From: Ascidiella aspersa
Lineage: Eukaryota
Assembly: GCA_963924565.1 (NCBI GenBank)
Contig: OZ004609.1
Span: 17,918,001-17,982,000, forward strand
Length of the DNA: 64,000 nt
Direction: 5' to 3'
The notes below the pieces were generated by a model. It searched no databases. It saw only the letters and a program-made list of their open reading frames with translations, and was not told the DNA's origin. A program made the translations under genes and the position numbers. This document shows, piece by piece, positions 6,660 to 51,539 of the stretch (positions are counted from its first letter, which is position 1; each line of letters opens with the position of its first letter).

Positions 6660-6861
6660 ACACAAAATCAAAACAAACCCTAGGCAATTAAAAAGGTAAA
6701 ATTGGCTAATCTGCGAAACAGGGGTAATAATGAAGTATTTTAGATAAGAAAAAAAACACGAGTTGAAATTTTAGATAAAAAATACAGCGTGCAATCAGTT
6801 CTGCATCAATGATTATTATAAGTCATAGCATTTATTTACAATGGGGGCGCCGGCTTAGAAG

Positions 6862-7560
6862 TAAACTGTCAATTAAGTTTCCAAATGTAACTCTAATTGT
6901 GTCTAATATAATGTATTTTGTTTTATATTTTCGGTTAATCATGTACTTACGAACAGTTCTTTTTGTAATATATCTTGTTTCGTTTACTTTTCTTTTTCCT
7001 TGTAAATATGCTTAGCCGTTCCCTGGGGTCTACGGACTCTTTTTTTTTTTTTGGTGTTTGCATATAGGCCTATATACCGTTGTTCCAAAAGATTTATAAA
7101 TCTACTTATCTATCTATTCGCCGTGGGCTCGGCGGCGTACCAGTAAAGTGTTTAAATAGGTTTTCAAACTTAACGCTTATTGTGTTTAATATAATGTATT
7201 TTGTTTTGTCATTTCTGTTCTGGATGTACTTACGAATAGTTCTTTTTGTAAAGTATCATGTTTCGTTTTCATTCTCATTTTCTTTTTTTTCTTGTAAAAA
7301 TACTTAGCCGTTCCCTGAAATCTACGGACGGTTTTTTAGTTTTTGCATATAGGCCTATATACTGTTGTGCCGAAACAGTTTCACATCTATTTAAATTATT
7401 TAACTATCCTTCCACAGTAGGCTCGCTGCGTAACAGTAAAATGTTTAATAAGTTTTCAAATGTAAAGCTAATTGTGTTTAATATAATGTATTTGGTTTTG
7501 TATTTACGAATAGCCTTTTTGTTGTAGCCTATCTTAATTCGTATTGCTTTCTTTTATATG
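6862..7560 (+). repeat. Diverged tandem repeat of about 285 bp (about 2.5 copies) in the LINE 3' UTR
   Basis: Units start at about 6862, 7143 and 7436 and share TTGTGT(C/T)TAATATAATGTATTT. The first two end in CTTAGCCGTTCCCTG...CTACGGAC...GCATATAGGCCTATATAC. Confidence 0.85.
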
Positions 7561-11188: not shown

Positions 11189-14100
11189 ATGAGGCTTGTA
11201 TTTGTAGTGCTTGTGGTAGCTTGCTTTTGGCATACTACGCGTTCAATCACCACAATTTCACCAGGACTACCACCAGCGGAAAATTGCAAACACTACAAAT
11301 CTTTGATCACCGACCTTCTAGTGACAGTGTCTGCTTCGTTTCTAGCGGACAACCCTCGCGGCACTGACCCTGCCCTTAATCCGCAGCGTGTGCGCCCGCA
11401 CTCCCCAGATGGCCTGTTTCGGGCATATTATGGAGTCGGTGCATCGGCCGAAGAGTTCAAGAAGGCGATTCTCGACATGGTGTATCTGAAATTCGGCAAG
11501 ACCCAAAAAATGGATCGCAATCAATTGCGCAGAAACATTGCCCTTTATGTATCAGCTGGCAGCTTCAATCTAGCCCGACATACCATGGGACAACTGCTTT
11601 TTGCAATCACCGGCGACTATGCGGGGCTTGACAAGGCTTGGGTGACTGCGGCTTGCCTGGCTTTCAGTCGCGTTCAGACTGCAGAAACCGCTTTAGGCAT
11701 TGAGTTCTCTAGGTAAGGATTGTAGTTTAACTGAAACATTCGTTCTCGAGGAGACCACAGGTATTTGTGTCAAGTGTCCTCTTATAAAATAAGTATCCAC
11801 TCTTTAAAGCTGAACTAAGAATATTGACGTGTGCAAAATATTTCCTCATTTCAGGTTTGCGGTAAACCTCCTAAATTTAAACACGAAAGCTTCAAATAGA
11901 ATTTAAGTTGGTGTTTTAACAAAAACTCTTTCCTAAGTTTGCACGCATTTAGAATTGTGTAATAAATTAATAATGCTTGCAAGGTAAAAAAAAAATGCTG
12001 ACAAGCTATTTTCGATTCGGCGCCCACACAAATGTCATGTCACAGCAATACCGCCATTGGGTTAGTTAATCGAATCCAGCTAAGGTAAAAAAAAATTGTT
12101 GGTGACAGCTAATGTACAACATTCTTTCTAGTACAGTGGATCCCAACCTGGGAGTGTGCGGCCCCCAAAGAGGTCGCAATGGGTTGTCTGGAGGGTTGCC
12201 GTGTAGTATTTGATAAAGAAAAATGCATATGAAATAATAAAGATAAACAAAAAGTTTAGCAGTATAAAAGGAGAAAAAGAAACCGCCCGTCAAACATTTG
12301 TCTTTATGTGGCTTTCGCTGCAGTAAACCAGTTATGTTTATGACGTCACCATAACACTTTTCAATTATTGAATCAAGCGTAGCTACAGTCAAACGATGGC
12401 TAATAAAAATGAATGGACGCTCAAACCGTAACTTTAGCTTGTTGTGCATACTTAAATCCGAACATTTTAGCCAAATTTCGATGCAATCCGTCTAGATTTT
12501 TCCCAATTTGAATTTGCTAATTTTTAAATGTGTGTCGCGAGAACAAAAATTTGAGAACCAGTATCACTGTCCTAATAGTATTTCATCCAGTTTCCCTTCT
12601 GTGTTATGACATTGCACTTTCTACACTTAGGCTAAGAAACGAAGTTGGGGACTTGGAGTACGGCAGTTTTCTGGCTGTGGGAAGCGGAAAGACGCTGGCG
12701 TTTGTTATCGACGATACCGGAAGTATGGGAGGAGAGATACGGGATGCACAGCAGCGAGTCAACGTAACGTGTTTCTTATATATATCCGTATAAATCTATT
12801 TATATTAGCGAAACTGAGAATCAGTACAGATTAACATAGTGCTTTTCATTGTTCATTAATGAGCCAGAGAACCCTAGAAAATAACCTCGCAATGCCGTGT
12901 AATTGGATAGCGAACGAATGGCTGAATCCAGAGATACCTATTTCAAAATTTACCCAGTACTGTCAAAGGTGTTCACCATAAACAAATTGATCTTACCAAC
13001 TGTTAGTTGGTTGCCTTTTGCCTCATGTGTAATGGCGAGTGTTGCATATTGCCGCAAGATTCATTTCATAAATTTGTATACCAATATTGTAAAGGTTCTT
13101 TTCACGTCATGGTTTTATCTTGCTGTGAAATTTAACGATATCGTATAACCGATGTTTTTAAGCTGGGCTACATTTTGTCATAAGTATACAACAGTTTATC
13201 TTGTGTTACGTTTTGTTGCCATTGTCTTATTTCTTCTGTTTTATGTTGCTTGATTGGTATTTTAGTTGATCATTGATCATTTACAAAACTCGTTGGATCG
13301 ACCCCAGTCTTTCGTCCTCGTACCTTTCAACGATCCCAGGGTCGGTCCTCTCACTGTGACGAGGGATCCAAACACTTTTAAGGCTGCTATTAATAAGTAA
13401 TTGAATTTACTATTATTTTATGTAATTTATCTGCTATATATATAAATTTAGCCAAATTTACTTTATTTTGTATATTATTATATATTTTTTTTGTTTATAA
13501 GTAATACCCGACTAGAAAAACACATGACGTTGTTTATAGGTCGTATAATCGATTTTAATTGAATTCATGTTCTGATAGAAGATAGAGGATAAAACGCATG
13601 TGTAATAGGTATTTTGCAGGGCATAATACACTGACTAGAAGTAGTAATGGCTGGTCGATCATTCCCAGATCACTAGGATCTGATTGTAATAACAAATAGT
13701 TGGTTTCGGTTGGTTGGTGGGTTGTGTTGCGTTGTATATGGGAAACTGTTCTTCTCTTTTAACAAGATGATGAAATCCCTAAAAGCCCACTGCCCATAAC
13801 GAACGGGACACTTTTTGTTTAAAGCCGCCCTTTTGACAAATAAACACTTAAGGATATAAAGGGGCATACAAACCACGACAATAAAGACTACATTATACTT
13901 GTTTTGATTGTATAATTCTGTTTTGTAGACTGTTTGCATCTGGAGGCGGAGATGCCCCAGAATTATGTCTTCGCGGAATACAGATCGCATTGGAAAACTG
14001 TAGAGCTGGTTCCATTGTTTATGTCATAACCGATGTCCATGCGAAGGATTATCATTTACAGGTGAAACATGCATAAGTTTTTCTTATTACAAAATTATGC

Positions 14101-17100
14101 ATCGTTGTTGTTGTAAATCTCGCCATCTGATTTGTGGTTGGGTATTTTAGAACACCAGACAAATGTTGTTATTTTGTTGCTTTGTGAGAATAACAAAAAA
14201 AGAAGATACCGGTAAATAAAACATCCAATTCAAAGACCTGAAACCCATGAAGGTTGGACAACTATGGAGGCTCTTTAAATAGAATCGCCGTACCAAAATT
14301 TTGTTTAGTTAGTAAACAATTTATTTTTTCCGCGTTGATTCCACGGTTACTCTATTAGTGAAGGAATGTTGTCGTTCAGCAACCTAAATTTTACTATTAG
14401 GTGTTGTTGAAAGCCTATACGTTTCAAACCGAACCAAAAGCTATTGCACACCAATATTATGTCTAGAGTTGACTCGAATTTGAACGATATGACCCACTTC
14501 GTTGCTTTTGGCTGAATTTTTCCTTTACGTAGGAAAGTATTTTCAATTACTAGCTTGGTATTGCATATGCCGCAGACTACTTCGAAAATCAGGTTGCCTG
14601 ATATGTTTTAGCCAATCCGACTTCAAAAACTCTGCTATAAGACTAGAACATTTCTAAATGGCTTTATGAAGAAATGAAAAAAAGGTATTTTTAGTATGGT
14701 CACGTGATCTTCTAGGATTTGCTTCTGGCGGCAAACCTCTTTAACTTTTTTAGTAACTGTAATTCTACTTCTAACAATGTGGTACTGTTGTTTTTATCTG
14801 CACAGGACGCCGTTATTGCCCAGGCCAAACAACGTAAAATTAGTATCGTATTTATGCTAACCAACGACTTGGCGTACTGTTCCCCTGTTCCAGACCAAAG
14901 ATATTCACAATGTCAAGAGCTGTATAAGCGCATCGCACAAGAGACTGGCGGAAAAGTAAGTAGGTTTGGTATTATTTAAAAATAACTTTTTTCTATAATC
15001 AATACCTTTTTTAGAAACAAATTTTTTTAAAACAAAGTTTTAATTTTACTTTGTCTGCCTAAAAGCAAAATATTTTTCCTTGTTGAAGTTGACATAGTTT
15101 AAAAGGTGGACTATATGAATAGTGAATACCGTTTTGCCATGGCGGCGTTAATAGCCCGTATACATGTGAAACCGGACCTTTGGCTTTCAGGTTTTTGTCA
15201 CTTCAAAGCACTCATTTTTCAAGGCCACAGAAATCGTTCAAAACAACGTAAAGCAAGGAATTGTTGTGCTCAAACAAGTATCTTTGGAGCGCACCACAGG
15301 TAGGCAATAGATTACACGATAAATCAAAAAATTACTTATGTTAGTATTATATCCGACACGACTGTCAACCTTTGTTTATGGGGGTCTCTATTTTTTTTTT
15401 TTTTTATAAAAAAGATAAAAAGTAACTTCTCAAATGCCAACTGTTTTCTGCAACCAGGTGCCAACCACCGCGTATACTTCGACGTGGATAGCAGCGTCAG
15501 CGAATTGTTCATCGAAGCTGTTGGAGGTTGTGGTGAAAATGGACCTATCATTCGACAGCCGGGATCGAGCAATCAAACTCAGATGTGGACGTACGTACGA
15601 TATTTTTAGATCAATGTCGTGTTTTATTTGCAATGGCGAGGCGATATGTTTTTATAAACATTTATAGTTCGCGTTTACCTAGATTTGGTTTTCCTATTTT
15701 ACATTTGAGAGAGCAACATAATCCCGTTGGCCATTATAACGGGTGAGAATATTCCCTCGAAGCCGTATAACAGATTCTTCGAACCAAAATAAAAATAGTA
15801 TTTTGAAATAAAAGTTGAAAACTTATTGTTTTAGTGATATTGTTTGCAACCTGGGGTCGCGATCTCCAAGGGGTCAGAGCTTATATTGAGGGATCGCCAT
15901 GTACTATTTGGTAAAGGAAAACTTATCTGGAAATACTCATATAAACTTACATTAAACCATTGCCCAAGAACAAAGGCACCCGGCGATATGACTTTTGTAT
16001 TTATGCCATTTTATGTCAGGTGAACTAATCGTGTTTATGACGGAAACATTAGTGTAATGTCAATCAATGGAAGGATCCCGAAGACATTTTTTGCGACAAT
16101 CGACAAAATGTCTTTAACAACATTACACGTAATTAATATCTTTGTTACAACAAATTACCCACTTAAAAAATTCATCTAAAAATTAAAAAAATCTAAAAGA
16201 AAACAATGTACAGGTATAAAACAGTAAAGTGTTGTTCTTGAACAGGCCTCTGTTATATTAGATTTGCATGATGATCGATTCGATCTTATACATCCTTTTG
16301 CAAAGGGGATTTGTTGACCGAGACAAGGTTTTCATTTTACGGGCTAATAGCGCGAGCGTTACCTCACTTGAGAGAGGGTTTGTTTTAAACCACTTGCGTG
16401 ACACTGGTATGCCACTGGTCCCTATATAAATATCTGGATGAGACCACACACAGAAATTGATGGTAATCTATCACTTATGGCTGATAATGCTTGGCAGGTG
16501 AAAAACGAATACTCTTAAGCTACTGCAAATTGTTGTAAACAGTGCAAACTTCTCAAGGTATGACAATTGTACAGAGGGATGCCATGCTCGCAAAGCAATT
16601 AAATATCCTTTACTGGTAATTGGCAGATCAGCACGCTCCACTATTATATTATTTTTAGAAAATCAATGTTTAAGAGCGAATTAACCAAACGTAAATAAAC
16701 CATGACTTATGAAAATAATAACATACCATATAAACTTGGCCAAACAAGCGTCACACTCGTGCCCACTGCTTGATGTCCGGTGGGTCCTTGACACGGCAGA
16801 ACGCGGCCCAAAAGGCGGCACAAACTTCACTGAGAAGAAGCTTAGGTGTACTAAGGCGTGACGACTCTTGACTTTGAAACAATCGCGCCCCAAAAGCGGG
16901 AGTTTGGCGCGGGCCGCACAATTGCCACTTGATTCCGGCCGTAGTCGCGCTTACCGATTCAGGGTTGTGTGTCGTGACAATGGCCTGTTGTAGAGCAAAA
17001 TACACGTTGTCAGGACAGCGGATAATCCGAGAGTAAAGTCATTTGCTTGGTTTGCTTTCTTGTCTGCGGTCTGCCTCATGAAATCTCTTGTCGTTTGATG

Positions 17101-20100
17101 CGCCTCTTTATAAACAGTGGTCCGTGGGCCTATCAAACACGTCGTTATTGAAGACTAAGGGTAGTGTTATCGACTTCAAGATTTTAAGGTAATGTCAAAC
17201 GGATTTACGGGCTATCATTAGCGTTCTTCCAGTTCAAAATTTTAAACATAACATCAAACTTGCCCAGCTTTCGCACAAATTACCGGTTGAAGGTTTTTTT
17301 TGATGCAAAAGAAAAGGAAACAGTTGCCGTTTTTGATTCACGATTACATAAAAGTTCTTTACACCTGTTACATTTACATCGTTTAATAACAGATCTACGT
17401 GTTGCCAAATGCTACCCGCGACCTACGAAGAATAGTTCTCATGCTTGTCGCATGATTATGATGCATTGCTCCACTTTAGTTGATGCAATTGAAAGCTGGT
17501 GTTAATTATTGCGATAATATCACTTCACATTAAGTAAAACATAAGGCAGGGAATCACTACAAAATGAGCTTTAAGTAATTGCACACATCTGCAATCGCAC
17601 AAAAGCCTATTATTTGTTTTCTAAATCTATTTTGTGAAATAAGTTGCTGGACCTTAAAAATTCGCATCGCCCACCTTAAATTATACGTTAAGAATGGTGC
17701 AAATCAACTGGCCAACTTCTCCTTTGAAACTGCATTCTGCGAGTACAAATATTTGGCCAGCATCGAATTCAGTCATCGCGCTTTCCAATGTTTTACCTTT
17801 CACGTCGGTGCTTCTGACGCGGCCACATAAGAAGATGCAGCACAGTCAGTGGCGGCTGGCCTTTGAAGCTATATTGACTTGCCAATAAAATTATCTTCCG
17901 TTGCTCGATCAGGCGTTACCGCACACTAAAAAACCACGTGAGGAAAGTTGCACGCGTTTGTTGTGGTTCTTGTTAAGCTGACTGGCGGTCTGAGGTTCTA
18001 TCCGCTAAAACCAAACACTGTGTTACGCTACCTTTTTGTGCAGTGAAATTGGAAACATCGTGTGTACAGGTGCACTCTCGCAAAGTAATCCTTGTTCAAA
18101 CAGACGGACAGTCGGACAGGTTGTTATTCTCTCACCTACGATAAGGCCTTACTTTCTAAATCTCAGTATGCTACAGGGTGGAAAATTCATTTACGAACTA
18201 TTTAGAAGTGCTCGTGAAATTTGTCCGTTTCAAGATGTGCTTTACGAAAATACACCTGCGGATTAACTTCATCTGTATTGGCTGGAATATTTTAGGCCTA
18301 ATGTTAATAATTCGATTCTATGTTTTTGCAATCGGACACAAAGCTTGCACACGAGAAAAAAAAACGCCTGCAAGTTTTTTCGCTGTATTTTTTTGTCGGC
18401 TGATCTGAGATCCTGCATGAATAGAATCGAAATCGAAAGCATCTTACTTGGCGTCAATGTGCTTTTCGAAATGCGCCGTGTGTGGCGGAAGTAAACAACA
18501 AGCAAGCAAAACACGAGAGGCTCCCTCCGCGTCTAGCTGACCCAGAACTCAGTGACCTATTAAAACAAGAGTTAACCCTGGCACGGAGTTTGCGTCTGGC
18601 GTTTTGCTGCCCTAAAGCTTCTAAACGGAAACCGACACCTTAGATCGATTTTAGATTTCGCCAGGCGAATCGCTAACCTTGACCACCTGTCCTCGTAAGC
18701 TCTTGCAGTTGATTTTAAAATACGAACATCAGTCGCTCACCAACCGAAAAAGAAACTGTGTTAGCATATATTTCCTATACGTATCGCGTGTCGACAGACT
18801 GTCCACAAAACCGTTTATGAGGAATTTAGCGTTACTTTTCAGAAGCAAGTGAATGCTTCTCAGATGATGCGCCGGTGAAAATCGAAACACTTGTTTTTCA
18901 TGGTCATTTAACCATGCTACTGTCATTGGTATATGGCCCCTGTATGCCTTGTAACGCGTAATTCACCAAGCAAAACACGTGTGTCGTGTTGGCCTAAGTT
19001 GCGAAAGTTATCTTTTATTTATTGTAGTATTGTATACACCTCACAAGTTGTAATGCCATTAACACAAAATAAAAATAACTTTTATTTTCCTATTTACTTA
19101 TAACCGTTAAAAATAAATTATCGCAAACCTATTTTTTTATAATATTTCTATTGATTCCCGTTTAGCGTCGGTGACCTCTATTCAGCTTCTGTGGACGTGT
19201 CGGGTAACTTCGGCAAATGGTTTCTTGTGGTCGGCATCGTAAACAACTGCGACATCACCATATCAGGAAGGTCAACGTTCGGTTTCTTGAGCAACTCATT
19301 TGTCAAAGTTGGCGGAGAAGGAATATCCTCGTTTGAGGTATATGGTTCAACTAAAAAAAAAAACAAGTAGACGTATTTGTCAATGGAACTTGACTATCAT
19401 TTGTATTTGTTCCAAAACAGTGGATACTTGTAATTTACCAGGGTATAAGCAATGATCTAGGTGTTTTTAAACCAATAAGAGTGTAAATTTACATAATCTA
19501 AGCGAAAAAAATGACATTGGTTGGGTATAAAACGCAAAAAACATTTTGGACGTAACCGCTTACGTTTGGCGATGTGTTGTTATTCAGCGAGTTTGTGAGA
19601 TACTGTTGATTAAACTAAAAATATACATTTATCGTATAACATCTAAAGTTTTAAACAAACTGATTTTTGCTTTACTAAGTTTTGTACTTGGTTTGATCCA
19701 TATCATTGATGTGCAACCGGAATCGTTTCGAATATTAGTATTCCTGACAAATGCCCGATATACTGGATACGAAACAGGCCATTGTGTCGCAAATTGTCTA
19801 ACTTAATGTTTTTTAGCGTTTCAGTTATCACAATAATAGGCTTGTTTAAACGATCCTAACCGAACCTATATAATCCCTAAATTGGTTGTAGATAAAATTA
19901 AATGTTAAGAATAATTTACCAGGTCGCAAACGTCCCGCTTAAAGTTGTCAAATCAGCGGCTTATTGAACAGCCAGGGCTATATGCCGTTTCCAAACATTC
20001 AACCATGACTTAGTTTAAACTTTTGCCAACTCTCGGGGTCTTATGTCTATCATGTTTCATGCGGTATGGTAATCGCCCTTTGTGGATGACGTCAGTGCTT

Positions 20101-40100: not shown

Positions 40101-43100
40101 AGGTAGGAAGTCTAATAGTTAGTTCAACAGGCGCACGTTCGCTAAACTTAGACCGCCTCAAGGGCGTGCGTAGCAGCGCATAATTGTTGGTTGGATGTAT
40201 GGCTGCATTTTATATGGTGTATACGTTTTCTTATAGTTTGTCCGTATGCACGTTTGAACCGGTGCAGAAGTGAAATACGTCTTGATCTTATCGACAGACC
40301 GGTTGGTGCACATTTTATGAAACATCACACATTTAAAAGATATCTGAGTCTCGGTAATTTAAAAATTACACTACGCCACCCACAAGAGACTCGCTTTTGG
40401 ACAACACGTTATAAAAAAGTTTAATGACTTAAACGCCGGACTCAATCGTAATTTTGGTTTCATGAAACATTACGCGCTGTTTTAGCGAACGTGCGCCTTT
40501 GGAACTGTTAGAAATGAAACATCCTACCTTTTATCACCTTTTACTTTAGCTTGTTTTAACCGTTATTTTTCTTTTCTTACTTTGACCTGATAAAGCACGG
40601 TTGTGCGAAAGCTCGTCAGCAGTATAATACAATTTGTCAACATCGCCACTTGTTTTAAAATTCGATAAAATAACTTGAAATTGTTCTATGCATACAACAA
40701 ACTACAAAAAACCTGAAACAACTTCTTGATCACAGACTACCTATGTTTGTCCCTATTTTCCGTTTTTTTTACTTCGTCATTGACTCAGATACAACTTCGT
40801 GACCCCACTGACCTCGCTGGTGGTGATCCGCTCCGAGGACCGGAAACAAATCGAGGAAGATCTGAAAGATGCGGAGAAGCTGCGGAAGCAGGAGGAGCAG
40901 GAGGGACTCCGGTCGATCGCGGCGATCTGGACGACGACGACCACCACGCGTGCTCCTCCTCCTCCTCCCATGCGACATCTCGCCTATGACGGCTCTCGTT
41001 CAGGAGGAGGTGGATTTTACGGCGACCCTCACTTCGTTGTTCCTCTTCGGGAGGACACGAAACTTTGCTTCAACTGGGACGGGAAAGACAACGAGGTGGG
41101 AAACTCCATCGGTTTCTTCTCCAAAAAAATAAAAAATAAAAAAATCGCACGGATTTTATAATTTTCGACGTAAATTGTATCAGTGCTTTTCAACCGGGTG
41201 TATCGTACACCCCAGGGTGTACCAGATTTTTTGAAGGGTGAACCACGTTGGCGGGGTGTTGTGGGGTGCAAAAGATACCGCATTACAATAAAGTCTATGA
41301 TCATAATAAATAAACAGGTGTTTTACCAGTCTGACTTGAGTGTACAATACATGGCACAACCTGTATTTAAGCGTACGTAGCTTGTAAGATACTATTTTTT
41401 ATTTGTGTCATCATAACCATTATTTCCTGGGGTGTACAAGTTCTTTAGTAAACGTAAAAGTGTGTACTGTTCCAAAAAAGGTTGACAAGCACCGAATTAT
41501 ATTACATTTTCCTTACAAGGTACCTACAAAGGTAGATTATAAACAGCAATTAATGACTAAACTGTATTTAAAACTCTGCTGCAGATCTACAACTTGTTCT
41601 ACAATCCCGTCAGCCGCGTCACGGTTAATGGTTTGCTTATCGTCAGGGACGTTGCCAAGCTTAAAAAGCCGGGATCCTTCATTTCAAAATTGGCTATCTA
41701 TCTGCCTGAGAGGAACTTTCGAATTATTGTAAGTTTATGTTCGTATCTTATATTTCCTGTGATTCTTTGGTAAAACCAGTTAGAATTCTGCATTTGTGTG
41801 CCAATTAACATCAAATTCTAATACGCGTGTTATGAGTGAAATGCCCTTGCAAGAACGGCGTGCCTAAGAAGCAAAAATTGTAACAAATTTTAAAATTTCC
41901 TAAATGTTCTGGCGTTTATGTTAAGCTCCGGACATGGCCCAAGATACATTACGGGATATAACGTATCCGAAGTACAACAAGCTTCACAACTTTTAACCTT
42001 CCCTACCCTATCAGAGGCATTGCGTCCGGAGCGTTGTTCCGAATACCTACTGGTGGATGTTTGAAAATAATTTTCTCCATTGTTCAAAGCTTCAGAATGC
42101 AAACTCTTAGGAACTTTAGTGTAACCCTTTCAGTACAAACTTATTTTGTTTTTTTTACGAACGTAAAGTGCTTGTAAAGAAATGCCCAACTTCTGACTAA
42201 CGAATTACAGAAACTTGTCGACAATGGATGCACCCGGCAGTCTAAGCCATAAATATTCAAATTGTTTCGTTTGAGTTGGGCGATTTTTTTTAAATGATGG
42301 TGAAACGTCATCCTATCTATATGAAGACCGTTCCACTTTAGGCCTGGATCTGACTTTTAATTAATATTTAAAAAACACTGTAACATTTTATAGGTTACCC
42401 CTTATAACGTGACGATTTGGCGCAACGATTATTCCAAACCACTGATATTCAACGTCACCTACCTAATGACCTTCACCAGAAAAGGAATTAGCGTGAAATT
42501 TCTTCGCGCAACTCACAGCACCGCGAAGATACAAGTTTTCTGCTACGGTTTAATATTTAACGTAAGTTCAAGATTGGAAACTGGTTTAAAGTTAAATTTG
42601 TGTGCGTTAAATCGAATCCAATTTTCGCTTCTTTGTATAGATCACTTCATACAGTAAGTGCTGTATAAACTATACACAATTTGAATAATAACAAGTGATG
42701 CAGAAATGAGTTGCAAAGTTTGCCTGGCTACTGTTTTTTTGCTCATGACGAACTCGTTTGCGATGATTTGAATGGTATATACAAGTTAAGATTTTTTATT
42801 TAAAGCGGATCCGTAACGCCGTTTTATCTTGGTAATATACTTCAAGAAAGCCTTGCAAGTGACATGTCAACTTACAGGAATATGCAGGTAAATGCCGCCG
42901 GCGTTTATCCATTCCTAATTTCTGAAACCGTGTAGCATACCACGGCGCACGTAAATTATGTGCCATAGTACAGCTTAAGCATAAGACTATGCTTTATCTG
43001 GATCTCGGAAAAGTTCATCGTTGGCTAACTACTGTACATTTTGTGGATTTGTTTATGTAATAGGCAGCGTTGTAAACTAGTCATTTTGAAATGACTCAAT

Positions 43101-46100: not shown

Positions 46101-49100
46101 ATTTGCGGACTTTGTACAGCAAACGGCCTAAAAGCCCGAAGCTTTCCTGTTAAAATAACATAGGTTATATATAGATTTTACCGTTGTGTTTTGTCCGTTC
46201 GTTCAGGGGCTAAAAAGTGTGATGCTGTACCTTTAAAGATGCTTTTACCGATTTAATGATGTTTAAACAGCTTTTATCAAAAGCAATACGAGTGCACTTA
46301 TCTTTCCTTCCAATCAAACCCCTAAGGAACCGTGAACGCTACCGATTGAGTTTTGTGTGCCTTAAAAGCTCTGTCGTTATATCGCGCAAAATATATGGTC
46401 GTGATTTTCAACCTTTCATGACTGATGAAAAACTGAAATGAAAGCTATATTTTTGCACTCTCGCTTAAACAAATTAAAAAAAACGATGGACGACAATGGA
46501 CGCTGGAGATATAGGACTTGTTGGCATTATGTCTGATGTTATTCAGATTTCTAAATCACAGAGCCTTTAGGTTTTTCTATCTACCTCAACCCCTGTTAAA
46601 CGCTTTGTCGCTAGAAATGGTAGACCCTACAGTGTATGAATTATAAAGTAGAATAAGCACATTTTTGAAATTCGAACTTCACATCAACGAAGTTGTATGC
46701 AAACTAATTTTTTTGTTATACAATTGCCACGATTAATCTCTAATGATAAAACAAAAGTTATGGGATCAACTGGGCCTTTCATATACTAAACGGTCTTTCC
46801 CTGCTTTCCGGGAACCGGTTTCTAAGCCATAAACATATCTAACCATCTCAGGCCAACCGTTGCAAAAAGTTAAAATGTAAGTAAAGAAATAGAAACCTTA
46901 AAATCATTTGTTTCTTTACAACTTAGAAAAGTTCATTTATATTATTTTAGTTTAGAAATAAACTCGTCGGTTTAACTTTTTATTGTTTTTTGTCGCATTT
47001 AAAAAAATCACCTGTCGTCAAAAAAGTATACAATGGTATTAGGTGCTCATAAAACTAATATAAAGTTATTGTATTAACCTAAGAAAAGCGCACCTTCGGC
47101 ATTCATTTAATTGGTCATCTTGTTTGCTATGCTATATGTTGTTGAATAAGTTTGCAATACTTTTAGATTTGTTGATTAACTTTTGTCACGCAAACGACAT
47201 ACATATTTTTAAACTTTGAACGTTTCTCGAGGTGGAAATGGATTGCAGACTTATTTGAGCGATAACAAACATAGATCTGCGTTAGATGTATTAAAAATAC
47301 TATTGAACCGACGTTTCAATATTAATAAATAAGGCCTTTATCCGTAAACGAACCCAAGAATAGTAGAGATGTGAGATTGGCTATGTATATAAAAACTAGC
47401 AGAAGCCAATCATTTTCAAGGCTCGACTAGCAGAAGCACGCTCGAACGTGTACTTAGCGCCTGCACGGCATACCGGAGCACCGGCTTATACCGACGTTTG
47501 TTGCTGTTAGCCACAACTTGCCAGTCCGCATTTTTTCCGTTCAACTTTCGTAGCGTCCTGCTGGTGAGAGTCATGATGAATTGCAACTCCCCCTTGACAT
47601 AATATCGGCTTGAACATGAGTAAATGTCGCATTGTATGCGGAACAAACTAGTGGTAATATTACTATTAAAAAATCGTGCACCTAAAAGTCATATTTCAAT
47701 AGTTTCCTAAAATGTTAAAATGCATTTTTTTGCGTTTGTTGTTTTGTTGCTTTCCCGTATTTTTTATTTATTTATTTGAATAATTTACATTACAAATAAA
47801 TTCTGAAATGGCTTTGTTAAACTGTATTGAAAATCTTTGATATTTTAAAGGAGCGATGCATTCTACTATTAAAGTGTTTGTGAAGGATCTGTAAAAATAA
47901 AGAGTAAGCAATATTCCAGGCGGACGTAAAGAATTTCTCCTTGAGCTTAGTTTACTTGAAATGTGTTTACATGACGTATGATTTGTACTTAAAACAGCAC
48001 CTGTTCTGATTGACAGATGTTGTGCAATTTTTCTTGTTCTTGGTTGAATGCTTTTCACTCGTCCGCGAATAGTGAGTTTCTCATTGGTCATTCAGTCACA
48101 TTCCGGAGAAAATGGGTTGTCAAAAAAATGTTGTTTTTTTCTGATGACAAACTGCACGTTTGTTAGTTAATTTAGGGAAGCCAAGAAAAAAATTTACGTG
48201 TTTTTTTATCAAGTTAAATAGGTGACGTTACAAACTTTGTTGTGTAACTTTGGATTTTTTCACAAATATGTGTTGGACAACAGATTCTGCCCTATGACGG
48301 AATATAACTGTTGCATAACGCAGACAAAAGGCTGGGCCTTTATGTTTTACCTGACAAACTTATTTCACTGTGACTTTTTCGCGCTTTATATTTCAATAAT
48401 TCGTAGAAGTCTGCTATAAAAACATCTATAGTTTAATTTACGCATGGGCAGAATACAAATCTTATATTTAGTTTGTTTTCACCAGACTATTACTCACAAG
48501 ACGTGTTTAGTCTGTATCTTGTAAGACTTATAAGAGAAAATGCACTCTGAGAAAAAATATCAGTGTGATTTAACACCTAACGGTTATAGAAAAAGCTACA
48601 CAAATTATCACAACCAACAGACAAATCGATATAATGTAACTTTTGATACGTTACTTTTTGTTAAATGGTAGAACAAATAATATGTTGCTGTTTAAAAATT
48701 TAACACGACCTTAACGAACCGAAATTTCAGTAAATTTATTTGTAGTTTTTAGTTTTTAATACAAATATTTCAAATTATTATGATAAAGCGTGAAATTAGC
48801 CCTATATAACCAACTTGGTAGTTTCAAACAGTGTGGAAAAGACGACATTTAAAAAAAAAATTAATGAAAATAACCATTCCTTCAGTCCTAATAAGTTTAT
48901 CTTTTCAATTGTTTAGATGAAGCTGGTTCGGCGGCGACCGAATATGGTAGACCACCTCGATTTCTCTATGACGACCCATCACATTTCGGAGGAGCCGTCG
49001 GACGGTGTCATAGGTCAATTTTTAAACGCTGATGTTCGACTTGAGGAAGGCGATCAGGATATGGCATACATGGAAATTAAGTAAGTTTCAAAACAATCTT

Positions 49101-51539
49101 ATTTTGCCATGCGAAAAATAAATATTTTATGTGTTACACTGTCTTAAATTTTAGCGATGTTATACCTTTTTAGAAAAGTTTACCATTTTTTGGTGTTTGA
49201 TTGTACTTACACAAACGCCAACTCCTATTTTACGATCTAAACGCATGTTTTTAAATTGAATTTTGTTAAAAGGCATACCCAGTCTCGTATGTTCAGTAAT
49301 TAAGCAAGAGGTTGTATGAATCGTCCATTCGTTCGGCTTTCGCCCACACAGTTATTTTTAGGCCTGGGCATTTTTCAAAAATAAGTTGTCTCTGTGTGTA
49401 AGTGTTAGTGTTTAGTGTTTCTATAAACTGGAAAGACGATGCAACTTAACGTCACTCACAAAGAAAATAGATCAAAAGAAAAAGTTCCACTTTATGGCGA
49501 CTGTGATGATTGCTGATTGCGTTTCTACGAAAAAATTCCTGGCCTCTCTTTCTCTCTCTCTTTTCTTTTCTCTCCGTTGATCTTTTTCGGTAGACCACCA
49601 TGATCTTGACATAAACCGGATGTTTTTTTAAAAGCGTTATTAAAAGTTTTTAACACTATATTTCGCTTTTGTTTACGGGTATGATAACTGTTACCAGTTT
49701 TCAATTATGTTTTATTATTGATTTTGACATGAACCATTTTCGCATAGGAATTTAGTGTTTTTTTTTAACTGAAAATGTCGAGCCTTGTTTCTGTTATGTT
49801 TGACGTTTGAACATACAGAGCAAATGGTAACACTTCTGTTATCCGTATCGTTTGGCATTTGAACACCAGTTATTGGCCACCAAACTAAAATGATCCGAGT
49901 TTTCTTGTCGGCATCGTTTCCGCCTGGGCGGTTAACGAGCTTTTCTCTTCTTAATGTGACATAAAAGCTGTTACGTTTATCCGTACAAAGTTCCTGCCCG
50001 ATGGCGTTGTTTTGTTCTTCGCCACGCCAGTATGTGACGCAATTCGAAACGTTCAGATTGCACAGGAAAAGTTGACGCCCCTGGCACCGGTATTTTGCTA
50101 GCCTCAGACACCCGTAGCTTTGAAGCACTAATATTAATATACAGTGTCGCGTTGGTGTAATCAAAAGCATGGCTGTAAGCAACAAAGCATAGGCTACTGC
50201 CGCAAGGTAATATAAAGCACTATTTAAAGTTATCTTGTTCTATTTGCTTAATAAATCTCCTAATCCACAGTAACGGTATTATTTGATATAATCATCTCTT
50301 GTAATATAGTTTTTGTGTTTTAATTCAAGCGAAGTCTATATTCGGTCTACGAACAATTTCTGCTGTTCGATATGCCACCAATAAGCGACACTGCAAACTT
50401 GTCATTATGTTTTCGAGCGTGATATGTACACGTAAAAAATCATAAAGCAATGCAATAAGCAACTAAGGGCGGAAAAAAAGTAACCGTTGCTATAAGTGCA
50501 AGACAACACAACCGTTAATCTTTTTTTGGTACTTCCAACAATCCAAACCTTAGCATTAATGACAATGGCGCTCGCAAGCCTGAAACCACCGAATAGCATT
50601 GAAGTTTGCAAAGACACGCAGTGATTGCCGCAAAGCGGTTGCCGCTGAGATTTAATATCTTTGGACTTTGGAATTTCCGTTTGTTAAACCGACCGAATTT
50701 ATCCGCGCTATACCTTTTGTATAGTTTATTGTACCTTGGCGTTATACCGGTAGCAAAATTCAATCTTAGTACTTGTGTTTTATGATTTACTGGTAATAGA
50801 GTTATCGCGTTTTATTAATAACTTTTTATCAAGAAGATTGACTATATTAACCTATTTTCAACTATAGATTCGATCATGTGGTGAAGATCTTGGCACGAAG
50901 CCGATCAGGGAATTTCCATTTAAAACTGATAAATCATAAAACATTCAATGCTGACAAAGGGGTCTTACGCTATTTCGTTTATATATATTTGTCTGAGGAG
51001 TTATAGATGTGGAATTCAAGATCGCAAATCAAATGCTAAAATTTGGAGTCGTTATCAGTAGATTGGAATGCAGCAGTTTAAGGGACTTTTAGTTGTTTTA
51101 ACTATTTAGCTGGGCTAAGGTTTACGAAAGCGAAATTAGCCTTAGGCTGAACACCTTGTAGAATGGCGAGGAAACCGACCGTGCCGTCGGTATTAAACTT
51201 AACCAGAATTGTGCTGATGTTAAGACCGTGTAAAAACATATTTGTCTCGGTGAACTTATTCTACTTACCTTATCTGGTCGTGCTATGATAAAAAAATATT
51301 CAAATGTAAAAATTGCGATTAAAAAATATATTCTATTGCCATCGTTTTTATTTTTCAGTTCTTGCTTTGGTATGGTCAGCAAGGCAGTTCGACGTGATCC
51401 GGTTACAGATACCCGTCTCACATGTTGGTTTTCCTATGGCAACGCTCGCGACCTTATAAGAGGCAATCATCAGCGCTATCTGGTGGAAGAACTTTTCGAA
51501 ATTCCGCAGTACCAAACTTCCACAAGGGGGCAATGCTAG
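11189..51539 (+). CDS. Secreted VWA7-like / inter-alpha-trypsin inhibitor heavy chain (ITIH)-like chimeric protein, 29 coding exons, about 1622 aa
   Basis: Exons, all GT-AG and phase-consistent, total 4869 nt: 11189-11712, 12631-12763, 13266-13396, 13929-14061, 14806-14955, 15191-15299, 15458-15590, 19166-19337, 21995-22232, 26740-26787, 27313-27455, 27627-27786, 28125-28236, 28442-28622, 31716-31850, 33777-33958, 35831-35980, 36227-36377, 36626-36821, 37170-37290, 37355-37538, 38043-38246, 38896-38985, 39425-39549, 40789-41095, 41585-41728, 42394-42561, 48917-49080, 51359-51539. Signal peptide MRLVFVVLVVACFW. vWA-1: FVIDDTGSMG, VLVPFNDP, GGGDAPELC, ITD. VIT: SRFAETVVTS...LTYQQLLRR. vWA-2: FVIDTSGSMSG, SDG. 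Then ERLWAFLKIKELL, YNFVTPLTSLVV, GDPHFVV, CFNWDG, GVIGQF and CWFSYGN...LIRG. Confidence 0.88.
24475..25389. mobile_element. hAT-type non-autonomous element, 915 bp
   Basis: Perfect 8-bp TSD GTTTAGGC (24467-24474, 25390-25397), imperfect TIRs CAGACCTTGGGC and GCCCAACCCTG, subterminal GGCCCGC motifs. Second copy at about 520-1020. Confidence 0.82.
29370..29415 (+). mobile_element. Degenerate tRNA-derived SINE-like fragment
   Basis: GGTCCCGGTATTACCGGAGGTCATGGGTTCTTCCTCACTGCAGGCC aligns with 32925-32970, which retains a B-box-like GAGTTCAAACC. Confidence 0.45.
29783..29848 (+). repeat. Short tandem repeat (TAATCTAATTTAGTC-like, about 4 copies)
   Basis: TAATCTAATTTA is repeated four times in tandem. 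Confidence 0.75.
30783..31285. mobile_element. hAT-type MITE
   Basis: TIRs CAGGGATGGCGAA (30783-30795) and TTCGCCATCCCTG (31273-31285). Flanks ACCTATA / ACCTAGTA resemble a decayed TSD. Confidence 0.78.
32925..32970 (+). mobile_element. tRNA-derived SINE-like fragment
   Basis: GGAGGTCGTGAGTTCAAACCTCAC resembles a tRNA T-arm/B-box. Homologous copy at 29370-29415. No complete cloverleaf. Confidence 0.45.
37578..38006. repeat. GAGTC/GACTC-rich dispersed repeat family (MITE-like)
   Basis: TGCGGAGTCG start, ...CTCCGCATCCCTG end and many internal GAGTC/GACTC units. Related segments at about 29261-29350, 30405-30435 and 30618-30675. Confidence 0.65.
39965..40665. mobile_element. Foldback/MITE element with inverted arms of about 190 bp
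   Basis: Left arm (about 39968-40157) TGTTGACAAATTGTATTATACTG.TGACGAGCTTTCGC...AGGCGCACGTTCGCTAAA is the reverse complement of the right arm (about 40473-40662) TTTAGCGAACGTGCGCCT...GCGAAAGCTCGTCA.CAGTATAATACAATTTGTCAACA. Confidence 0.88.
41181..41494. mobile_element. hAT-type MITE
   Basis: TIRs CAGTGCTTTTCAACC and GGTTGACAAGCACCG; TSD AATTGTAT / AATTATAT (7 of 8). A related end occurs inverted at about 29156-29199. Confidence 0.78.
43065..43223. mobile_element. Short hAT-type MITE (CAAGTC family)
   Basis: TIRs CAGCGTTGTA and TACAACACTG; TSD GTAATAGG / ATAATAGG. Shares GAAGTCCCAGTC and CAAGTCATT with 2426-2809. Confidence 0.72.
43620..44467 (-). CDS. Nested antisense gene: secreted, highly cationic six-cysteine pro-peptide, 142 aa, 3 exons, family unknown
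   Basis: Minus-strand exons 44467-44313, 44187-44066 and 43771-43620, with canonical donors (GTAAGT, GTATAT), pyrimidine-rich acceptors and compatible phases (2, then 1). Translation: MSGISQCVLLCLVLALLFLVMPGEA RRRRRGKTPTGSLVTRRVGKPDKIFSKKHVKKQLQQRCGFIVKMKCNLLVHRCHTGVLT KR SISDEEEFS RTKR ATKSGMTRKRRGTMRRRRKWRYQNARIRGVRITCGMCRSRCWY*. TATAAAA at 44561-44555 and AATAAA at 43370-43365. Confidence 0.8.
44555..44611 (-). promoter_or_regulatory. Putative core promoter of the nested peptide gene: TATA box plus kappaB-like site
   Basis: GGCTATAAAAG on the minus strand about 90 nt upstream of the ATG; GGGGAATTTC at 44602-44611. Confidence 0.5.
49715..50170 (-). CDS. Nested antisense ORF, 151 aa, cysteine-rich, possibly secreted; candidate paralog of the 43620-44467 peptide
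   Basis: Longest unexplained ORF in the window. Acceptor CTTTGTTGCTTACAG is directly followed by CC-ATG (50170). Hydrophobic N-terminus MLLITPTRHCILILVLQSYG; contains RCQGRQLFLCNLNVSNCVT, a KR site, ITGVQM and TICSVC. Confidence 0.55.
   Translation of the reverse strand: MLLITPTRHCILILVLQSYGCLRLAKYRCQGRQLFLCNLNVSNCVTYWRGEEQNNAIGQELCTDKRNSFYVTLRREKLVNRPGGNDADKKTRIILVWWPITGVQMPNDTDNRSVTICSVCSNVKHNRNKARHFQLKKNTKFLCENGSCQNQ

What the first reader, a model, noticed from the sequence alone, without database searches (positions are those of the whole stretch)
11189..51539. Single-chain VWA7-ITIH chimera with two MIDAS vWA domains and a GDPH site
Seen: 29 exons splice without a stop into one ORF of about 1622 aa with one signal peptide. 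The first about 710 aa are VWA7/hemicentin-like and the rest is a full ITIH heavy chain. Both vWA domains keep MIDAS residues (DDTGS...TD and DTSGS...T...SDG). Known: in vertebrates VWA7 and ITIH1-6 are separate genes with their own signal peptides. I do not recall this architecture being described. Inference: a lineage-specific bivalent extracellular-matrix, adhesion or immune cross-linker.
Basis: partly seen in the sequence, partly recalled or inferred. Interest (0 to 1): 0.85.

Follow-up and report, generated by a model that had tools for sequence, protein, structure and literature searches.

The report
Sea-squirt VWA7–ITIH fusion gene

Summary
I rebuilt the model independently: 29 GT-AG exons (11189-51539, + strand), 4,869 nt, 1,622 codons, one N-terminal hydrophobic signal and no other. 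The motifs are DDTGS (aa 202), DTSGS (968), SDG (1098) and GDPHF (1380).

The critical join, exon 12 (ends 27786) to exon 13 (starts 28125), is present in RNA. One spliced 2,419-nt contig crosses it, and so does a raw RNA-seq read from a second study.

The same intron position and phase occur in seven paralogues on another chromosome. All 8 ITI_HC_C loci in this genome lie downstream of a VWA_4 domain.

Full-length proteins with the same architecture (about 1,590-1,730 aa) exist in Ciona, Clavelina, Styela and Phallusia. The Phallusia protein is 50% identical and collinear with 27 of 29 exons. A 5.8-kb metatranscriptome contig carries the same architecture as a single open reading frame.

Outside tunicates, VWA7-like proteins (amphioxus, fish, hagfish, shark, coral) and ITIH-like proteins (hemichordate, mollusc) are separate.

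So this is a tunicate-specific gene fusion that is already annotated, under ITIH names, but that I found discussed in no paper. Function is inferred: a secreted heavy chain with two metal-binding sites, cleaved at GDPH and attached to matrix glycans.

The parts
11189..11712 (+). Exon 1: start codon, signal-peptide-like N-terminus (MRLVFVVLVVACFW...) and the VWA7-type N-terminal domain (aa 1-174)
   Evidence: phmmer found the N-termini of the Ciona and Clavelina 1,586/1,602-aa proteins. Weak matches to the N-termini of amphioxus and hagfish VWA7.
12631..12763 (+). Exon 2: start of the VWA_4 domain with the MIDAS motif DDTGS (12710-12724)
   Evidence: Pfam VWA_4
13266..13396 (+). Exon 3: VWA_4
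   Evidence: Pfam VWA_4, E 2.5e-11
13929..14061 (+). Exon 4: VWA_4 with GGGDAPE (13942-13962) and VITDV (14023-14037)
   Evidence: Pfam VWA_4, E 2.3e-13
14806..14955 (+). Exon 5: end of VWA_4
   Evidence: Pfam VWA_4, E 3.4e-6
15191..15299 (+). Exon 6
   Evidence: tblastn of the ascidian fused proteins
15458..15590 (+). Exon 7: region matching GBD_Hemicentin in the orthologues
19166..19337 (+). Exon 8
   Evidence: tblastn with P0029, 59% identity
21995..22232 (+). Exon 9: the most divergent part
   Evidence: The 5' loose end of the X3 spliced contig matches its 3' end
26740..26787 (+). Exon 10: a 48-nt micro-exon
   Evidence: RNA joint 26787>27313 in X3 and in 2 X5 reads
27313..27455 (+). Exon 11: first part of the Ig_VWA7-type domain
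   Evidence: RNA joint 27455>27627, 4 X5 reads plus the X3 contig; tblastn
27627..27786 (+). Exon 12: last VWA7-type exon. Donor ACCG|GTCAGT, phase 1. An in-frame TAA at 27792-27794 lies in the intron.
   Evidence: RNA joint 27786>28125
28125..28236 (+). Exon 13: first ITIH-type exon. Conserved linker (AKGNSPGSFQYSTC..VVGQ..PRV) and start of VIT. No signal peptide.
   Evidence: The same intron position and phase occur in the C1 paralogues. T-A is invariant at this junction in 6 ascidian proteins.
28442..28622 (+). Exon 14: VIT domain
   Evidence: Pfam VIT, E 4e-16; RNA joints
31716..31850 (+). Exon 15: end of VIT
   Evidence: Pfam VIT; RNA joint 28622>31716 and the loose end into exon 16
33777..33958 (+). 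Exon 16
   Evidence: The RNA loose end GGGCAAGTATG... fixes its start
35831..35980 (+). Exon 17
36227..36377 (+). Exon 18: start of the ITIH vWA domain with the MIDAS motif DTSGS (36294-36308)
   Evidence: Pfam VWA/VWA_3
36626..36821 (+). Exon 19: vWA, GGST (36743-36760)
37170..37290 (+). Exon 20: vWA, LMSDGQ (SDG at 37280-37288)
37355..37538 (+). Exon 21: end of vWA
   Evidence: Pfam VWA
38043..38246 (+). Exon 22
38896..38985 (+). Exon 23. Start chosen at 38896; 38842 is also in frame.
   Evidence: This is the least certain boundary.
39425..39549 (+). Exon 24
40789..41095 (+). Exon 25: Thr/Pro-rich linker (40931-40969) and the GDPHF site (41021-41035)
   Evidence: G-D-P-H is invariant in 14 ascidian proteins.
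41585..41728 (+). Exon 26: start of ITI_HC_C
   Evidence: Pfam ITI_HC_C, weak
42394..42561 (+). Exon 27: ITI_HC_C
48917..49080 (+). Exon 28: ITI_HC_C
   Evidence: Pfam, E 9.8e-6; 28.2 bits, over the cut-off, in the genome search
51359..51539 (+). Exon 29: C-terminus and stop codon (51537-51539). The first AATAAA downstream is at 52217.
27593..27638 (+). Decoy. An ATG plus 15 hydrophobic codons (MKKVALSFCFVGLFS) lies in the polypyrimidine tract of intron 11 and overlaps the start of exon 12. With the GT at 27639 it would be in frame with exon 13.
   Evidence: No such joint was listed in RNA. It cannot exist in the C1 paralogues, where exons 11 and 12 are one exon.

Best explanation
One protein-coding gene of an ascidian (tunicate) genome encodes a secreted 1,622-residue precursor. 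A VWA7-type module occupies aa 1-691: signal peptide, N-terminal domain, VWA_4 domain with DDTGS/GGGD/TD metal-site residues, and beta-sandwich and Ig_VWA7-type domains. It is spliced in frame, through a conserved phase-1 intron, to a complete ITIH heavy chain at aa 692-1622. That half holds a conserved Cys-containing linker, VIT, a vWA domain with DTSGS...T...SDG MIDAS residues, a Thr/Pro-rich linker, GDPHF and an ITI_HC_C propeptide.

Shown here:
- the gene structure;
- the fusion splice in RNA;
- conservation of the fusion in 8 loci of this genome and in at least four other ascidian genera;
- absence of the fusion from the non-tunicate VWA7 and ITIH relatives that the searches found.

Inferred from what is established for vertebrate ITIH1-3 and other GDPH proteins, at about 40-50% confidence:
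- The precursor is cleaved between Asp1381 and Pro1382.
- This releases the roughly 240-residue ITI_HC_C propeptide.
- The new C-terminal Asp of the roughly 1,360-residue heavy chain becomes ester-linked to a glycosaminoglycan or other matrix glycan.
- A unit with two metal-dependent ligand-binding vWA sites is thereby anchored in the extracellular matrix, tunic or blood.

The fusion most likely arose in a tunicate ancestor. Splicing would have run from a VWA7 donor into the second exon of a downstream ITIH gene, with loss of the VWA7 tail and of the ITIH signal-peptide exon. This origin is an inference.
For: Gene model: 29 GT-AG exons and one ORF of 1,622 codons.

Domains, exon by exon.

RNA:
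- A 2,419-nt intron-less contig in run X3 (depth 78.5) joins exons 9-10-11-12-13-14-15-16, including 27786>28125.
- Raw stranded RNA-seq reads of X5, from a different study, show 27455>27627 (4 reads), 27786>28125 (1), 26787>27313 (2) and 28622>31716 (1). All are in the orientation expected for a + strand RNA.
- X5 depth is 0 at 27800-27999, so no 3' UTR follows the intronic TAA.
- The DNA run X1 shows none of these joints.

Paralogues:
- All 8 ITI_HC_C loci of the genome have VWA_4 and VIT upstream on the same strand.
- The seven C1 copies are about 40% identical in protein to the window gene.
- They carry the donor TCAG|GTGAGT and the acceptor ...ggcag|CG at the same codon and phase, giving S-A-K against T-A-K here.

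Orthologues:
- Ciona XP_009859948.1, Clavelina XP_076800117.1, Styela XP_039265384.2 and Phallusia CAB3257361.1 all have VWA_4 + (GBD_Hemicentin) + Ig_VWA7 + VIT + VWA + ITI_HC_C.
- The Phallusia protein is collinear with 27 of 29 exons at 50% mean identity.
- A 5,761-nt JGI metatranscriptome contig carries the architecture as one 1,709-codon ORF with UTRs and an AATAAA.
- Junction residues T-A, the linker Cys, VGQ and P, and G-D-P-H are invariant among ascidian proteins.

Outgroups:
- VWA7-like proteins of amphioxus, fish, hagfish, shark and coral lack the ITIH domains.
- ITIH-like proteins of a hemichordate and a mollusc lack VWA_4.

Against: Short reads and a de Bruijn contig cannot prove that a single molecule runs from exon 1 to exon 29.

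Raw-read support for the 12>13 join is one read with a 22-nt side.

X5 depth on exons 13-14 is far lower than on exons 12 and 15. The tool warns that such dips are not findings, because conserved stretches are filtered and exon 13 is shorter than a read.

A minor ITIH-only or VWA7-only isoform is not excluded.

No evidence here bears on cleavage at GDPH, on the acceptor glycan, or on what either MIDAS site binds.

Pfam VWA7_N, GBD_Hemicentin and Ig_VWA7 are not detected in the window's own short exons. They are detected only in paralogues and orthologues.
Confidence: 0.85

Rival explanations
1. There are two tandem genes. The VWA7-like gene ends at the TAA at 27792-27794. An ITIH-like gene starts at ATG 27593 with a 15-residue signal-peptide exon (MKKVALSFCFVGLFS, donor at 27638|GT) spliced to exon 13.
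For: The alternative is arithmetically in frame, and the peptide looks like a signal sequence. The TAA lies only two codons past the exon-12 donor.
Against: - The 27786>28125 joint is present in a spliced contig and in a raw read, while no 27638>28125 joint was listed.
- There is no read depth after the TAA.
- The hydrophobic ORF is the polypyrimidine tract of intron 11.
- In the C1 paralogues exons 11 and 12 are a single exon, so the decoy has no counterpart, yet the 12>13 intron is conserved in place and phase.
- All orthologous proteins read straight through the junction, with invariant T-A.
- The partial Ciona model P0020 also spans the junction.
Confidence: 0.04
2. The fused mRNA is only a minor read-through ('conjoined gene') product of two otherwise independent genes, and database models in other ascidians repeat the same annotation error.
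For: Gene predictors do merge neighbours, and raw-read numbers here are small.
Against: - No alternative terminal exon or first exon is visible.
- The X3 contig is unbranched across the junction at depth 78.5.
- A metatranscriptome contig holds the whole fused ORF in one intron-less piece.
- Junction residues and the linker are conserved across proteins 33-50% identical overall. Such conservation is not expected of an untranslated or accidental join.
- 8 of 8 ITIH-type loci keep the arrangement after duplication.
Confidence: 0.05
3. The gene is real, but the ITIH-like chemistry is lost. GDPH is not cleaved and no covalent glycan link forms, so the protein acts as a soluble or matrix-bound multidomain adhesion or opsonin-like protein through its vWA sites alone.
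For: - Vertebrate ITIH4 is not coupled to bikunin.
- No bikunin or TSG-6 orthologue was demonstrated here. Only three Link-module exon hits were found in the genome.
Against: G-D-P-H is invariant in all 14 aligned ascidian fused proteins, and ITI_HC_C is retained. This argues for selection on the cleavage site and propeptide.
Confidence: 0.3

Closest known systems
[quoted passage not shown]
   Same: - Same length class and same domain order: VWA_4, Ig_VWA7, VIT, VWA, ITI_HC_C.
- Same junction residues, and invariant MIDAS and GDPH motifs.
- The Phallusia protein is collinear with 27 of 29 exons at about 50% identity.
   Different: No database protein is closer than about 50% identity, so this species' copy is not in the protein collections searched. 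This genome also has seven further recently duplicated copies on another chromosome.
Vertebrate ITIH1-ITIH4 heavy chains (solved: ITIH4 9c4f, ITIH1 6fpy/6fpz)
   Same: - VIT + vWA (MIDAS) + DPHF-type site + ITI_HC_C.
- The closest homologue P0027 matches ITIH4 and ITIH1 at E 2e-96 and 8e-86.
   Different: - Vertebrate (and hemichordate and mollusc) ITIHs are stand-alone precursors of about 900 aa with their own signal peptide (for the invertebrates; established knowledge for the vertebrates).
- Here the signal peptide is replaced by a 691-residue VWA7 module.
VWA7 (vertebrate VWA7/G7c; amphioxus and coral VWA7-like proteins)
   Same: - VWA_4 with the DDTGS/GGGD/TD residues, followed by beta-sandwich and Ig_VWA7 domains at the same positions as in amphioxus P0036.
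- The N-terminal domain is weakly similar.
   Different: - The N-terminal domain is shorter: about 190 aa before the vWA domain, against about 270-300 in fish.
- Pfam VWA7_N does not recognise it.
- The C-terminal part that follows Ig_VWA7 in VWA7 proteins is replaced by ITIH. In amphioxus that part is EGF plus a C-type lectin; in fish it is a tail of about 125-145 aa.

Membership tests
[quoted passage not shown] | VIT domain N-terminal to the vWA domain | tested here: met
   Pfam VIT, E 4e-16 on exon 14; it continues in exon 15.
[quoted passage not shown] | vWA domain with MIDAS residues DxSxS...T...D | tested here: met
   Pfam VWA on exons 18 and 21. DTSGS, GGST and SDG are present.
[quoted passage not shown] | ITI_HC_C C-terminal domain | tested here: met
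   Exon 28 scores 28.2 bits, over the 27-bit cut-off, in the genome search. Exons 26 and 28 give weaker hits. Orthologues score 69-131 bits.
[quoted passage not shown] | Asp-Pro-His-Phe processing and ester-link site before the C-terminal propeptide | tested here: met
   GDPHF at aa 1380-1384. GDPH is invariant in 14 ascidian proteins. This shows the sequence only; cleavage was not tested.
[quoted passage not shown] | Stand-alone precursor of about 900 aa with its own signal peptide directly before VIT | tested here: not met
   Exon 13 has no hydrophobic start and is spliced to exon 12.
[quoted passage not shown] | Covalent coupling to bikunin chondroitin sulphate and transfer to hyaluronan by TSG-6 | not testable with these tools
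   Only three Link-module exon hits were found in the genome. No biochemical data are available.
VWA7 | VWA_4 (hemicentin/VWA7-type vWA) domain | tested here: met
   Pfam VWA_4 on exons 2-5, up to 50.5 bits per exon.
VWA7 | VWA7_N N-terminal domain (PF25107) | tested here: inconclusive
   Exon 1 gave no Pfam hit. phmmer of exon 1 against 10 VWA7 proteins gave E 3e-6 to 2.6e-5 to the hagfish and amphioxus N-termini. The ascidian profile aligns to amphioxus P0036 from position 37 onwards.
VWA7 | Ig_VWA7 and GBD_Hemicentin beta-sandwich domains after the vWA domain | tested here: inconclusive
   Neither is detected in the window's own split exons 7-12. Ig_VWA7 scores over the cut-off in the C1 paralogues (30-32.5 bits), in Clavelina (29.5 bits) and in Styela P0027 (28 bits). 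GBD_Hemicentin scores only 22-24 bits in orthologues. Exons 11-12 align to the Ig_VWA7 region of P0029.
VWA7 | Stand-alone protein of about 900-1,100 aa ending after the Ig-like region and tail | tested here: not met
   The reading frame continues into ITIH.

The most novel reading that the evidence does not exclude
This is a 'Rosetta-stone' reading. In ascidians the only detectable Ig_VWA7-bearing genes and all ITI_HC_C-bearing genes are one and the same fused gene family. The orphan vertebrate protein VWA7 may therefore work with, or physically bind, ITIH heavy chains in the same matrix-stabilising or inflammatory pathway. In tunicates the fusion would create a heavy chain with two MIDAS sites that is covalently anchored to tunic or blood glycans.

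A fold test of the two halves of the Phallusia protein gave only weak support for an interface:
- ipSAE 0.41, against 0.00 for the best of 3 controls.
- The pass mark was reached by 51 of 78 solved complexes and 2 of 108 mismatched pairs.
- At scores of 0.60 or under, only 5 of those 78 solved complexes passed, as did all 4 mismatches that passed.
- The runs agree in at least 58% of their contacts, and the partner's pLDDT is at least 70.
- The two chains are neighbours in one polypeptide, which by itself favours contacts.
Probability: 0.2. Interest if true: 0.6.

Novelty: new member of a known kind. Interest (0 to 1): 0.4.

Why it matters
The gene fusion is real, transcribed and old. It is shared by phlebobranch, aplousobranch and stolidobranch ascidians, so it predates their divergence. 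It joins two extracellular families that are separate genes in vertebrates, amphioxus, hemichordates, molluscs and corals.

It matters in two modest ways:
- Database names such as 'ITIH3-like' hide a 690-residue VWA7 module. Comparative studies of ITIH or VWA7 that include tunicates will mis-assign orthology and domain content.
- The fusion gives a testable functional hint for VWA7, whose function is unknown to my knowledge: it may act in the ITIH and matrix-glycan pathway.

It is not a new kind of protein. The architecture is already present in public protein sets.

Tried and rejected
- **Hidden signal-peptide exon (ATG 27593).** I considered it seriously because it is in frame with exon 13. 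I rejected it on RNA joints, paralogue gene structure and orthologue continuity.
- **An exon in 34264-34527 or 16262-16426.** There is no Pfam or homologue support, and neither is needed for the frame.
- **Exon 23 starting at 38842.** This is in frame but adds 18 hydrophobic residues with no counterpart in homologues, so I chose 38896. This boundary stays uncertain.
- **Pfam on the single exons 1, 6-13, 16-17, 19-20, 22-25, 27 and 29.** No significant family was found, because the exons are too short or too divergent.
- **Rfam scan of the window.** Nothing reached the gathering score.
- **Earlier scan notes.** None is near this place, and the genome-wide notes shown were unrelated.
- **Literature.** Five of the ten allowed full-text searches (VWA7+ITIH; ITIH+Ciona; inter-alpha-trypsin inhibitor+ascidian; two broader tunicate queries) found no paper that describes the fusion.
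- **Complex prediction of the two halves.** It gave weak support only. I use it only for the novel case.
- **X5 read depth on exons 13-14.** It is very low, but by the tool's own warning it cannot be interpreted.
- I gave the spliced 1,622-aa model to no search, family, fold or complex tool. All searches were run exon by exon by window reference, or with database proteins. The joined translation was computed only inside local scripts, to check frame continuity, motif positions and hydropathy.
Full report
**What is in the sequence**

The window has 38% G+C, no N, and belongs to contig C3 of a 308.6-Mb, 75-contig assembly. Between 11189 and 51539 on the + strand it carries a chain of short coding pieces.

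- Ambiguous junctions were inspected by eye.

The result is 29 exons, every one flanked by AG and GT. The CDS is 4,869 nt, or 1,622 codons, with a single stop at 51537-51539.

The only strongly hydrophobic 15-residue window is the N-terminus (MRLVFVVLVVACFW...). The protein therefore has one signal-peptide-like segment and no membrane span. It has 16 Cys and 12 N-glycosylation sequons.

**Domains, tested exon by exon**

- VWA_4 (PF25106, the hemicentin/VWA7 type of vWA domain) runs through exons 2-5, with up to 50.5 bits per exon.
- VIT is on exons 14-15 (E 4e-16).
- VWA is on exons 18 and 21.
- ITI_HC_C is on exons 26 and 28. Exon 28 scores 28.2 bits, over the cut-off, in the genome search.
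  - DDTGS, GGGDAPE and VITDV in the first vWA domain;
  - DTSGS, GGST and SDG in the second.
- A Thr/Pro-rich linker and GDPHF at aa 1380 come before the C-terminal domain.

**The critical point: one gene or two?**

Exon 12 ends at 27786 (ACCG|GTCAGT, phase 1). Exon 13 begins at 28125 (ttgttacag|CC). The join gives ...DVTFT-A-KGNSPG... in frame.

Two things made a rival plausible:
- An in-frame TAA lies two codons past the donor.
- An ATG at 27593 opens a 15-residue hydrophobic ORF that, with the GT at 27639, would also be in frame with exon 13.

RNA decides between them.
- In run X3, a 2,419-nt contig of depth 78.5 lacks five consecutive GT..AG introns. It joins 26740-26787, 27313-27455, 27627-27786, 28125-28236, 28442-28622 and 31716-31850.
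- Its loose ends read into exon 9 and exon 16. It therefore carries about 430 nt of the VWA7 half and nearly 2 kb of the ITIH half.
- Intronic contigs in X3 have depth of only about 2, and the DNA run X1 (48x) shows none of the joints. The contig is therefore cDNA, not a retrocopy.
- Raw stranded RNA-seq reads of the same species from another study (X5) show:
  - 27455>27627 (4 reads);
  - 27786>28125 (1 read);
  - 26787>27313 (2 reads);
  - 28622>31716 (1 read).
- All have the first mate on the minus strand, as expected for a + strand mRNA.
- X5 depth is zero at 27800-27999, so nothing reads on past the TAA.
- No 27638>28125 joint was listed.

Caveats:
- Only about 6% of X5 was read.
- The 12>13 read has a 22-nt side.
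- Depth on exons 13-14 is very low, but the tool states that such dips are not findings.
- Short reads cannot show one molecule from exon 1 to exon 29.

**Paralogues**

Genome-wide six-frame searches found 8 ITI_HC_C loci: the window and seven on contig C1 at 5.93-6.17 Mb. Each of the seven has VIT and VWA_4 hits upstream on the same strand, and the copies alternate in orientation. Ig_VWA7 is detected in this genome only in those copies.

One copy, fetched in full, is about 40-60% identical to the window gene in the alignable exons, from the N-terminal exon to ITI_HC_C. The seven copies are 95-99% identical to one another at the junction, so they count as one old paralogue lineage that was recently amplified.

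In all of them the last VWA7-type exon ends ...ATATCAG|GTGAGT (phase 1). The next exon begins ...ttccttggcag|CGAAGAGC, giving S-A-K against T-A-K in the window. The intron position and phase are therefore the same.

In these copies exons 11 and 12 are a single exon. The 'hidden signal peptide' of the window therefore has no counterpart there.

**Orthologues**

A full HMMER scan with exon 1 found 17 relatives. Two are long: Ciona intestinalis XP_009859948.1 (1,586 aa) and Clavelina lepadiformis XP_076800117.1 (1,602 aa), both named ITIH3(-like). Both have VWA_4, GBD_Hemicentin, Ig_VWA7, VIT, VWA and ITI_HC_C in that order.

Word-indexed searches with the VWA7 half, with a profile of six fused proteins, and with the ITIH half added:
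- Styela clava and Phallusia mammillata proteins;
- four unnamed metatranscriptome proteins of the same architecture.

One of the metatranscriptome proteins lies on a 5,761-nt contig as a single 1,709-codon ORF, with UTRs and an AATAAA near the end. That is a full-length fused mRNA.

The best match to the window is Phallusia CAB3257361.1 (1,617 aa). It is collinear with 27 of 29 exons at a mean 50% identity, including straight across exons 12-13. This suggests, as an inference only, a phlebobranch-like ascidian.

Across 6 and 14 aligned ascidian proteins, the junction T-A (6-protein alignment) and GDPH (both alignments) are invariant. The linker Cys, VGQ and P and the MIDAS residues are invariant in the 6-protein alignment and invariant or nearly so in the 14-protein one.

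**Outgroups**

The same profile search returned VWA7-like proteins of amphioxus, teleosts, hagfish, shark and a coral. They are about 920-1,360 aa and have no VIT or ITI_HC_C.

The ascidian profile aligns to these proteins from the vWA domain to just before the junction. For amphioxus it aligns from the N-terminal domain onward.

Amphioxus P0036 has VWA_4, GBD_Hemicentin, VWA7_4 and Ig_VWA7 at the same positions as the ascidian proteins. It then continues with EGF and a C-type lectin.

From the ITIH side, the nearest non-tunicate hits are a hemichordate protein (920 aa) and a mollusc protein (919 aa) without VWA_4. The closest solved structures are human ITIH4 and ITIH1.

The parsimonious reading is a fusion in the tunicate lineage, before the ascidian orders split.

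**How it probably works**

Shown: it is a secreted multidomain precursor with two vWA domains that keep metal-site residues, a conserved GDPH, and a retained ITI_HC_C.

Inferred from the established chemistry of vertebrate ITIH1-3 (my knowledge, not tested here):
- The precursor is cleaved between Asp and Pro of DPHF.
- The new C-terminal Asp is esterified to a glycosaminoglycan.
- A heavy chain of about 1,360 residues carrying both vWA sites is thereby anchored in matrix.

A Ciona tunic proteome lists 'ITIH3' (PMC7401272). A Botryllus preprint reports an 'ITIH4' transcript in neural-gland cells. Whether either is a fused family member was not checked. Three Link-module exon hits exist in the genome, so a TSG-6-like transferase is neither shown nor excluded.

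**Do the two halves touch?**

A fold test of residues 185-672 against 673-1180 of the Phallusia protein gave weak support:
- ipSAE was 0.41, against 0.00 for the best of 3 controls.
- The pass mark was reached by 51 of 78 solved complexes and 2 of 108 mismatched pairs.
- At scores of 0.60 or under, only 5 of those 78 solved complexes passed, as did all 4 mismatches that passed.
- The runs agree in at least 58% of their contacts, and the partner's pLDDT is at least 70.

Because the two chains are adjacent in one polypeptide, I give this little weight.

**Novelty**

The architecture is in RefSeq and UniProt for at least four ascidian genera, under ITIH names. The sequence kind is therefore known, and this gene is a new member of it.

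Five of the ten allowed full-text searches found no paper that mentions a VWA7-ITIH fusion. The fusion as such seems undescribed, but absence from this library is not proof.

Searches were run exon by exon by reference, or with database proteins. The joined translation was used only in local scripts for frame, motif and hydropathy checks.

Noticed in passing
G000:C1:5930000-6174000 (loci L001-L010): Seven copies of the same VWA7-ITIH fused gene lie in alternating orientation within about 245 kb. They are 95-99% identical to one another at the junction exons but only about 40-60% identical to the window gene in the alignable exons. This is a recent inverted or tandem amplification of an old paralogue.
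   Followed up: partly
window 2780-4249 (+): These are the last exons of an apyrase (CANT1-type, Pfam PF06079, E 1e-25 and 2e-21). This is the upstream neighbour gene.
   Followed up: partly
window 5610-6656 (+): A 349-codon open frame has a reverse-transcriptase domain (RVT_1, E 2.6e-18), so it is a non-LTR retrotransposon fragment. A 283-bp tandem repeat (2.3 copies) follows at 6860-7505.
   Followed up: partly
window 58561-63599 (+): The downstream neighbour is a leucine-rich-repeat type I membrane protein. It has a signal-like start and a Cys-rich cap at 58.6 kb, LRR exons at 61.5-62.7 kb, and a predicted membrane span plus cytoplasmic tail at 63.1-63.6 kb.
   Followed up: partly
window 28800-31400 (intron 14): This is very high-copy repeat DNA. 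Summed contig word depth in the DNA run X1 rises from about 48 to 4,000-82,000, with a peak at 30400-30600. RNA reads from both strands also fall here. The element family was not identified.
   Followed up: no
window 27593-27640: An ATG followed by a signal-peptide-like ORF is encoded by the polypyrimidine tract of intron 11 and is in frame with exon 13 through a GTCAGT donor. It is a good example of a decoy first exon, and neither RNA nor conservation supports it.
   Followed up: yes
window 28125-28622 (exons 13-14): Raw RNA-seq depth in X5 is about 20-fold lower on these two exons than on exons 12 and 15. It may be an artefact of the filter for conserved or human-like reads and of the 112-nt exon length. 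Skipping both exons would shift the frame.
   Followed up: no
run X4 (organism B) on window 26000-31999: A second organism's run holds 24% of the 31-mers of the junction stretch at 95-100% identity, including intronic pieces. A closely related species or population therefore carries the same locus.
   Followed up: no
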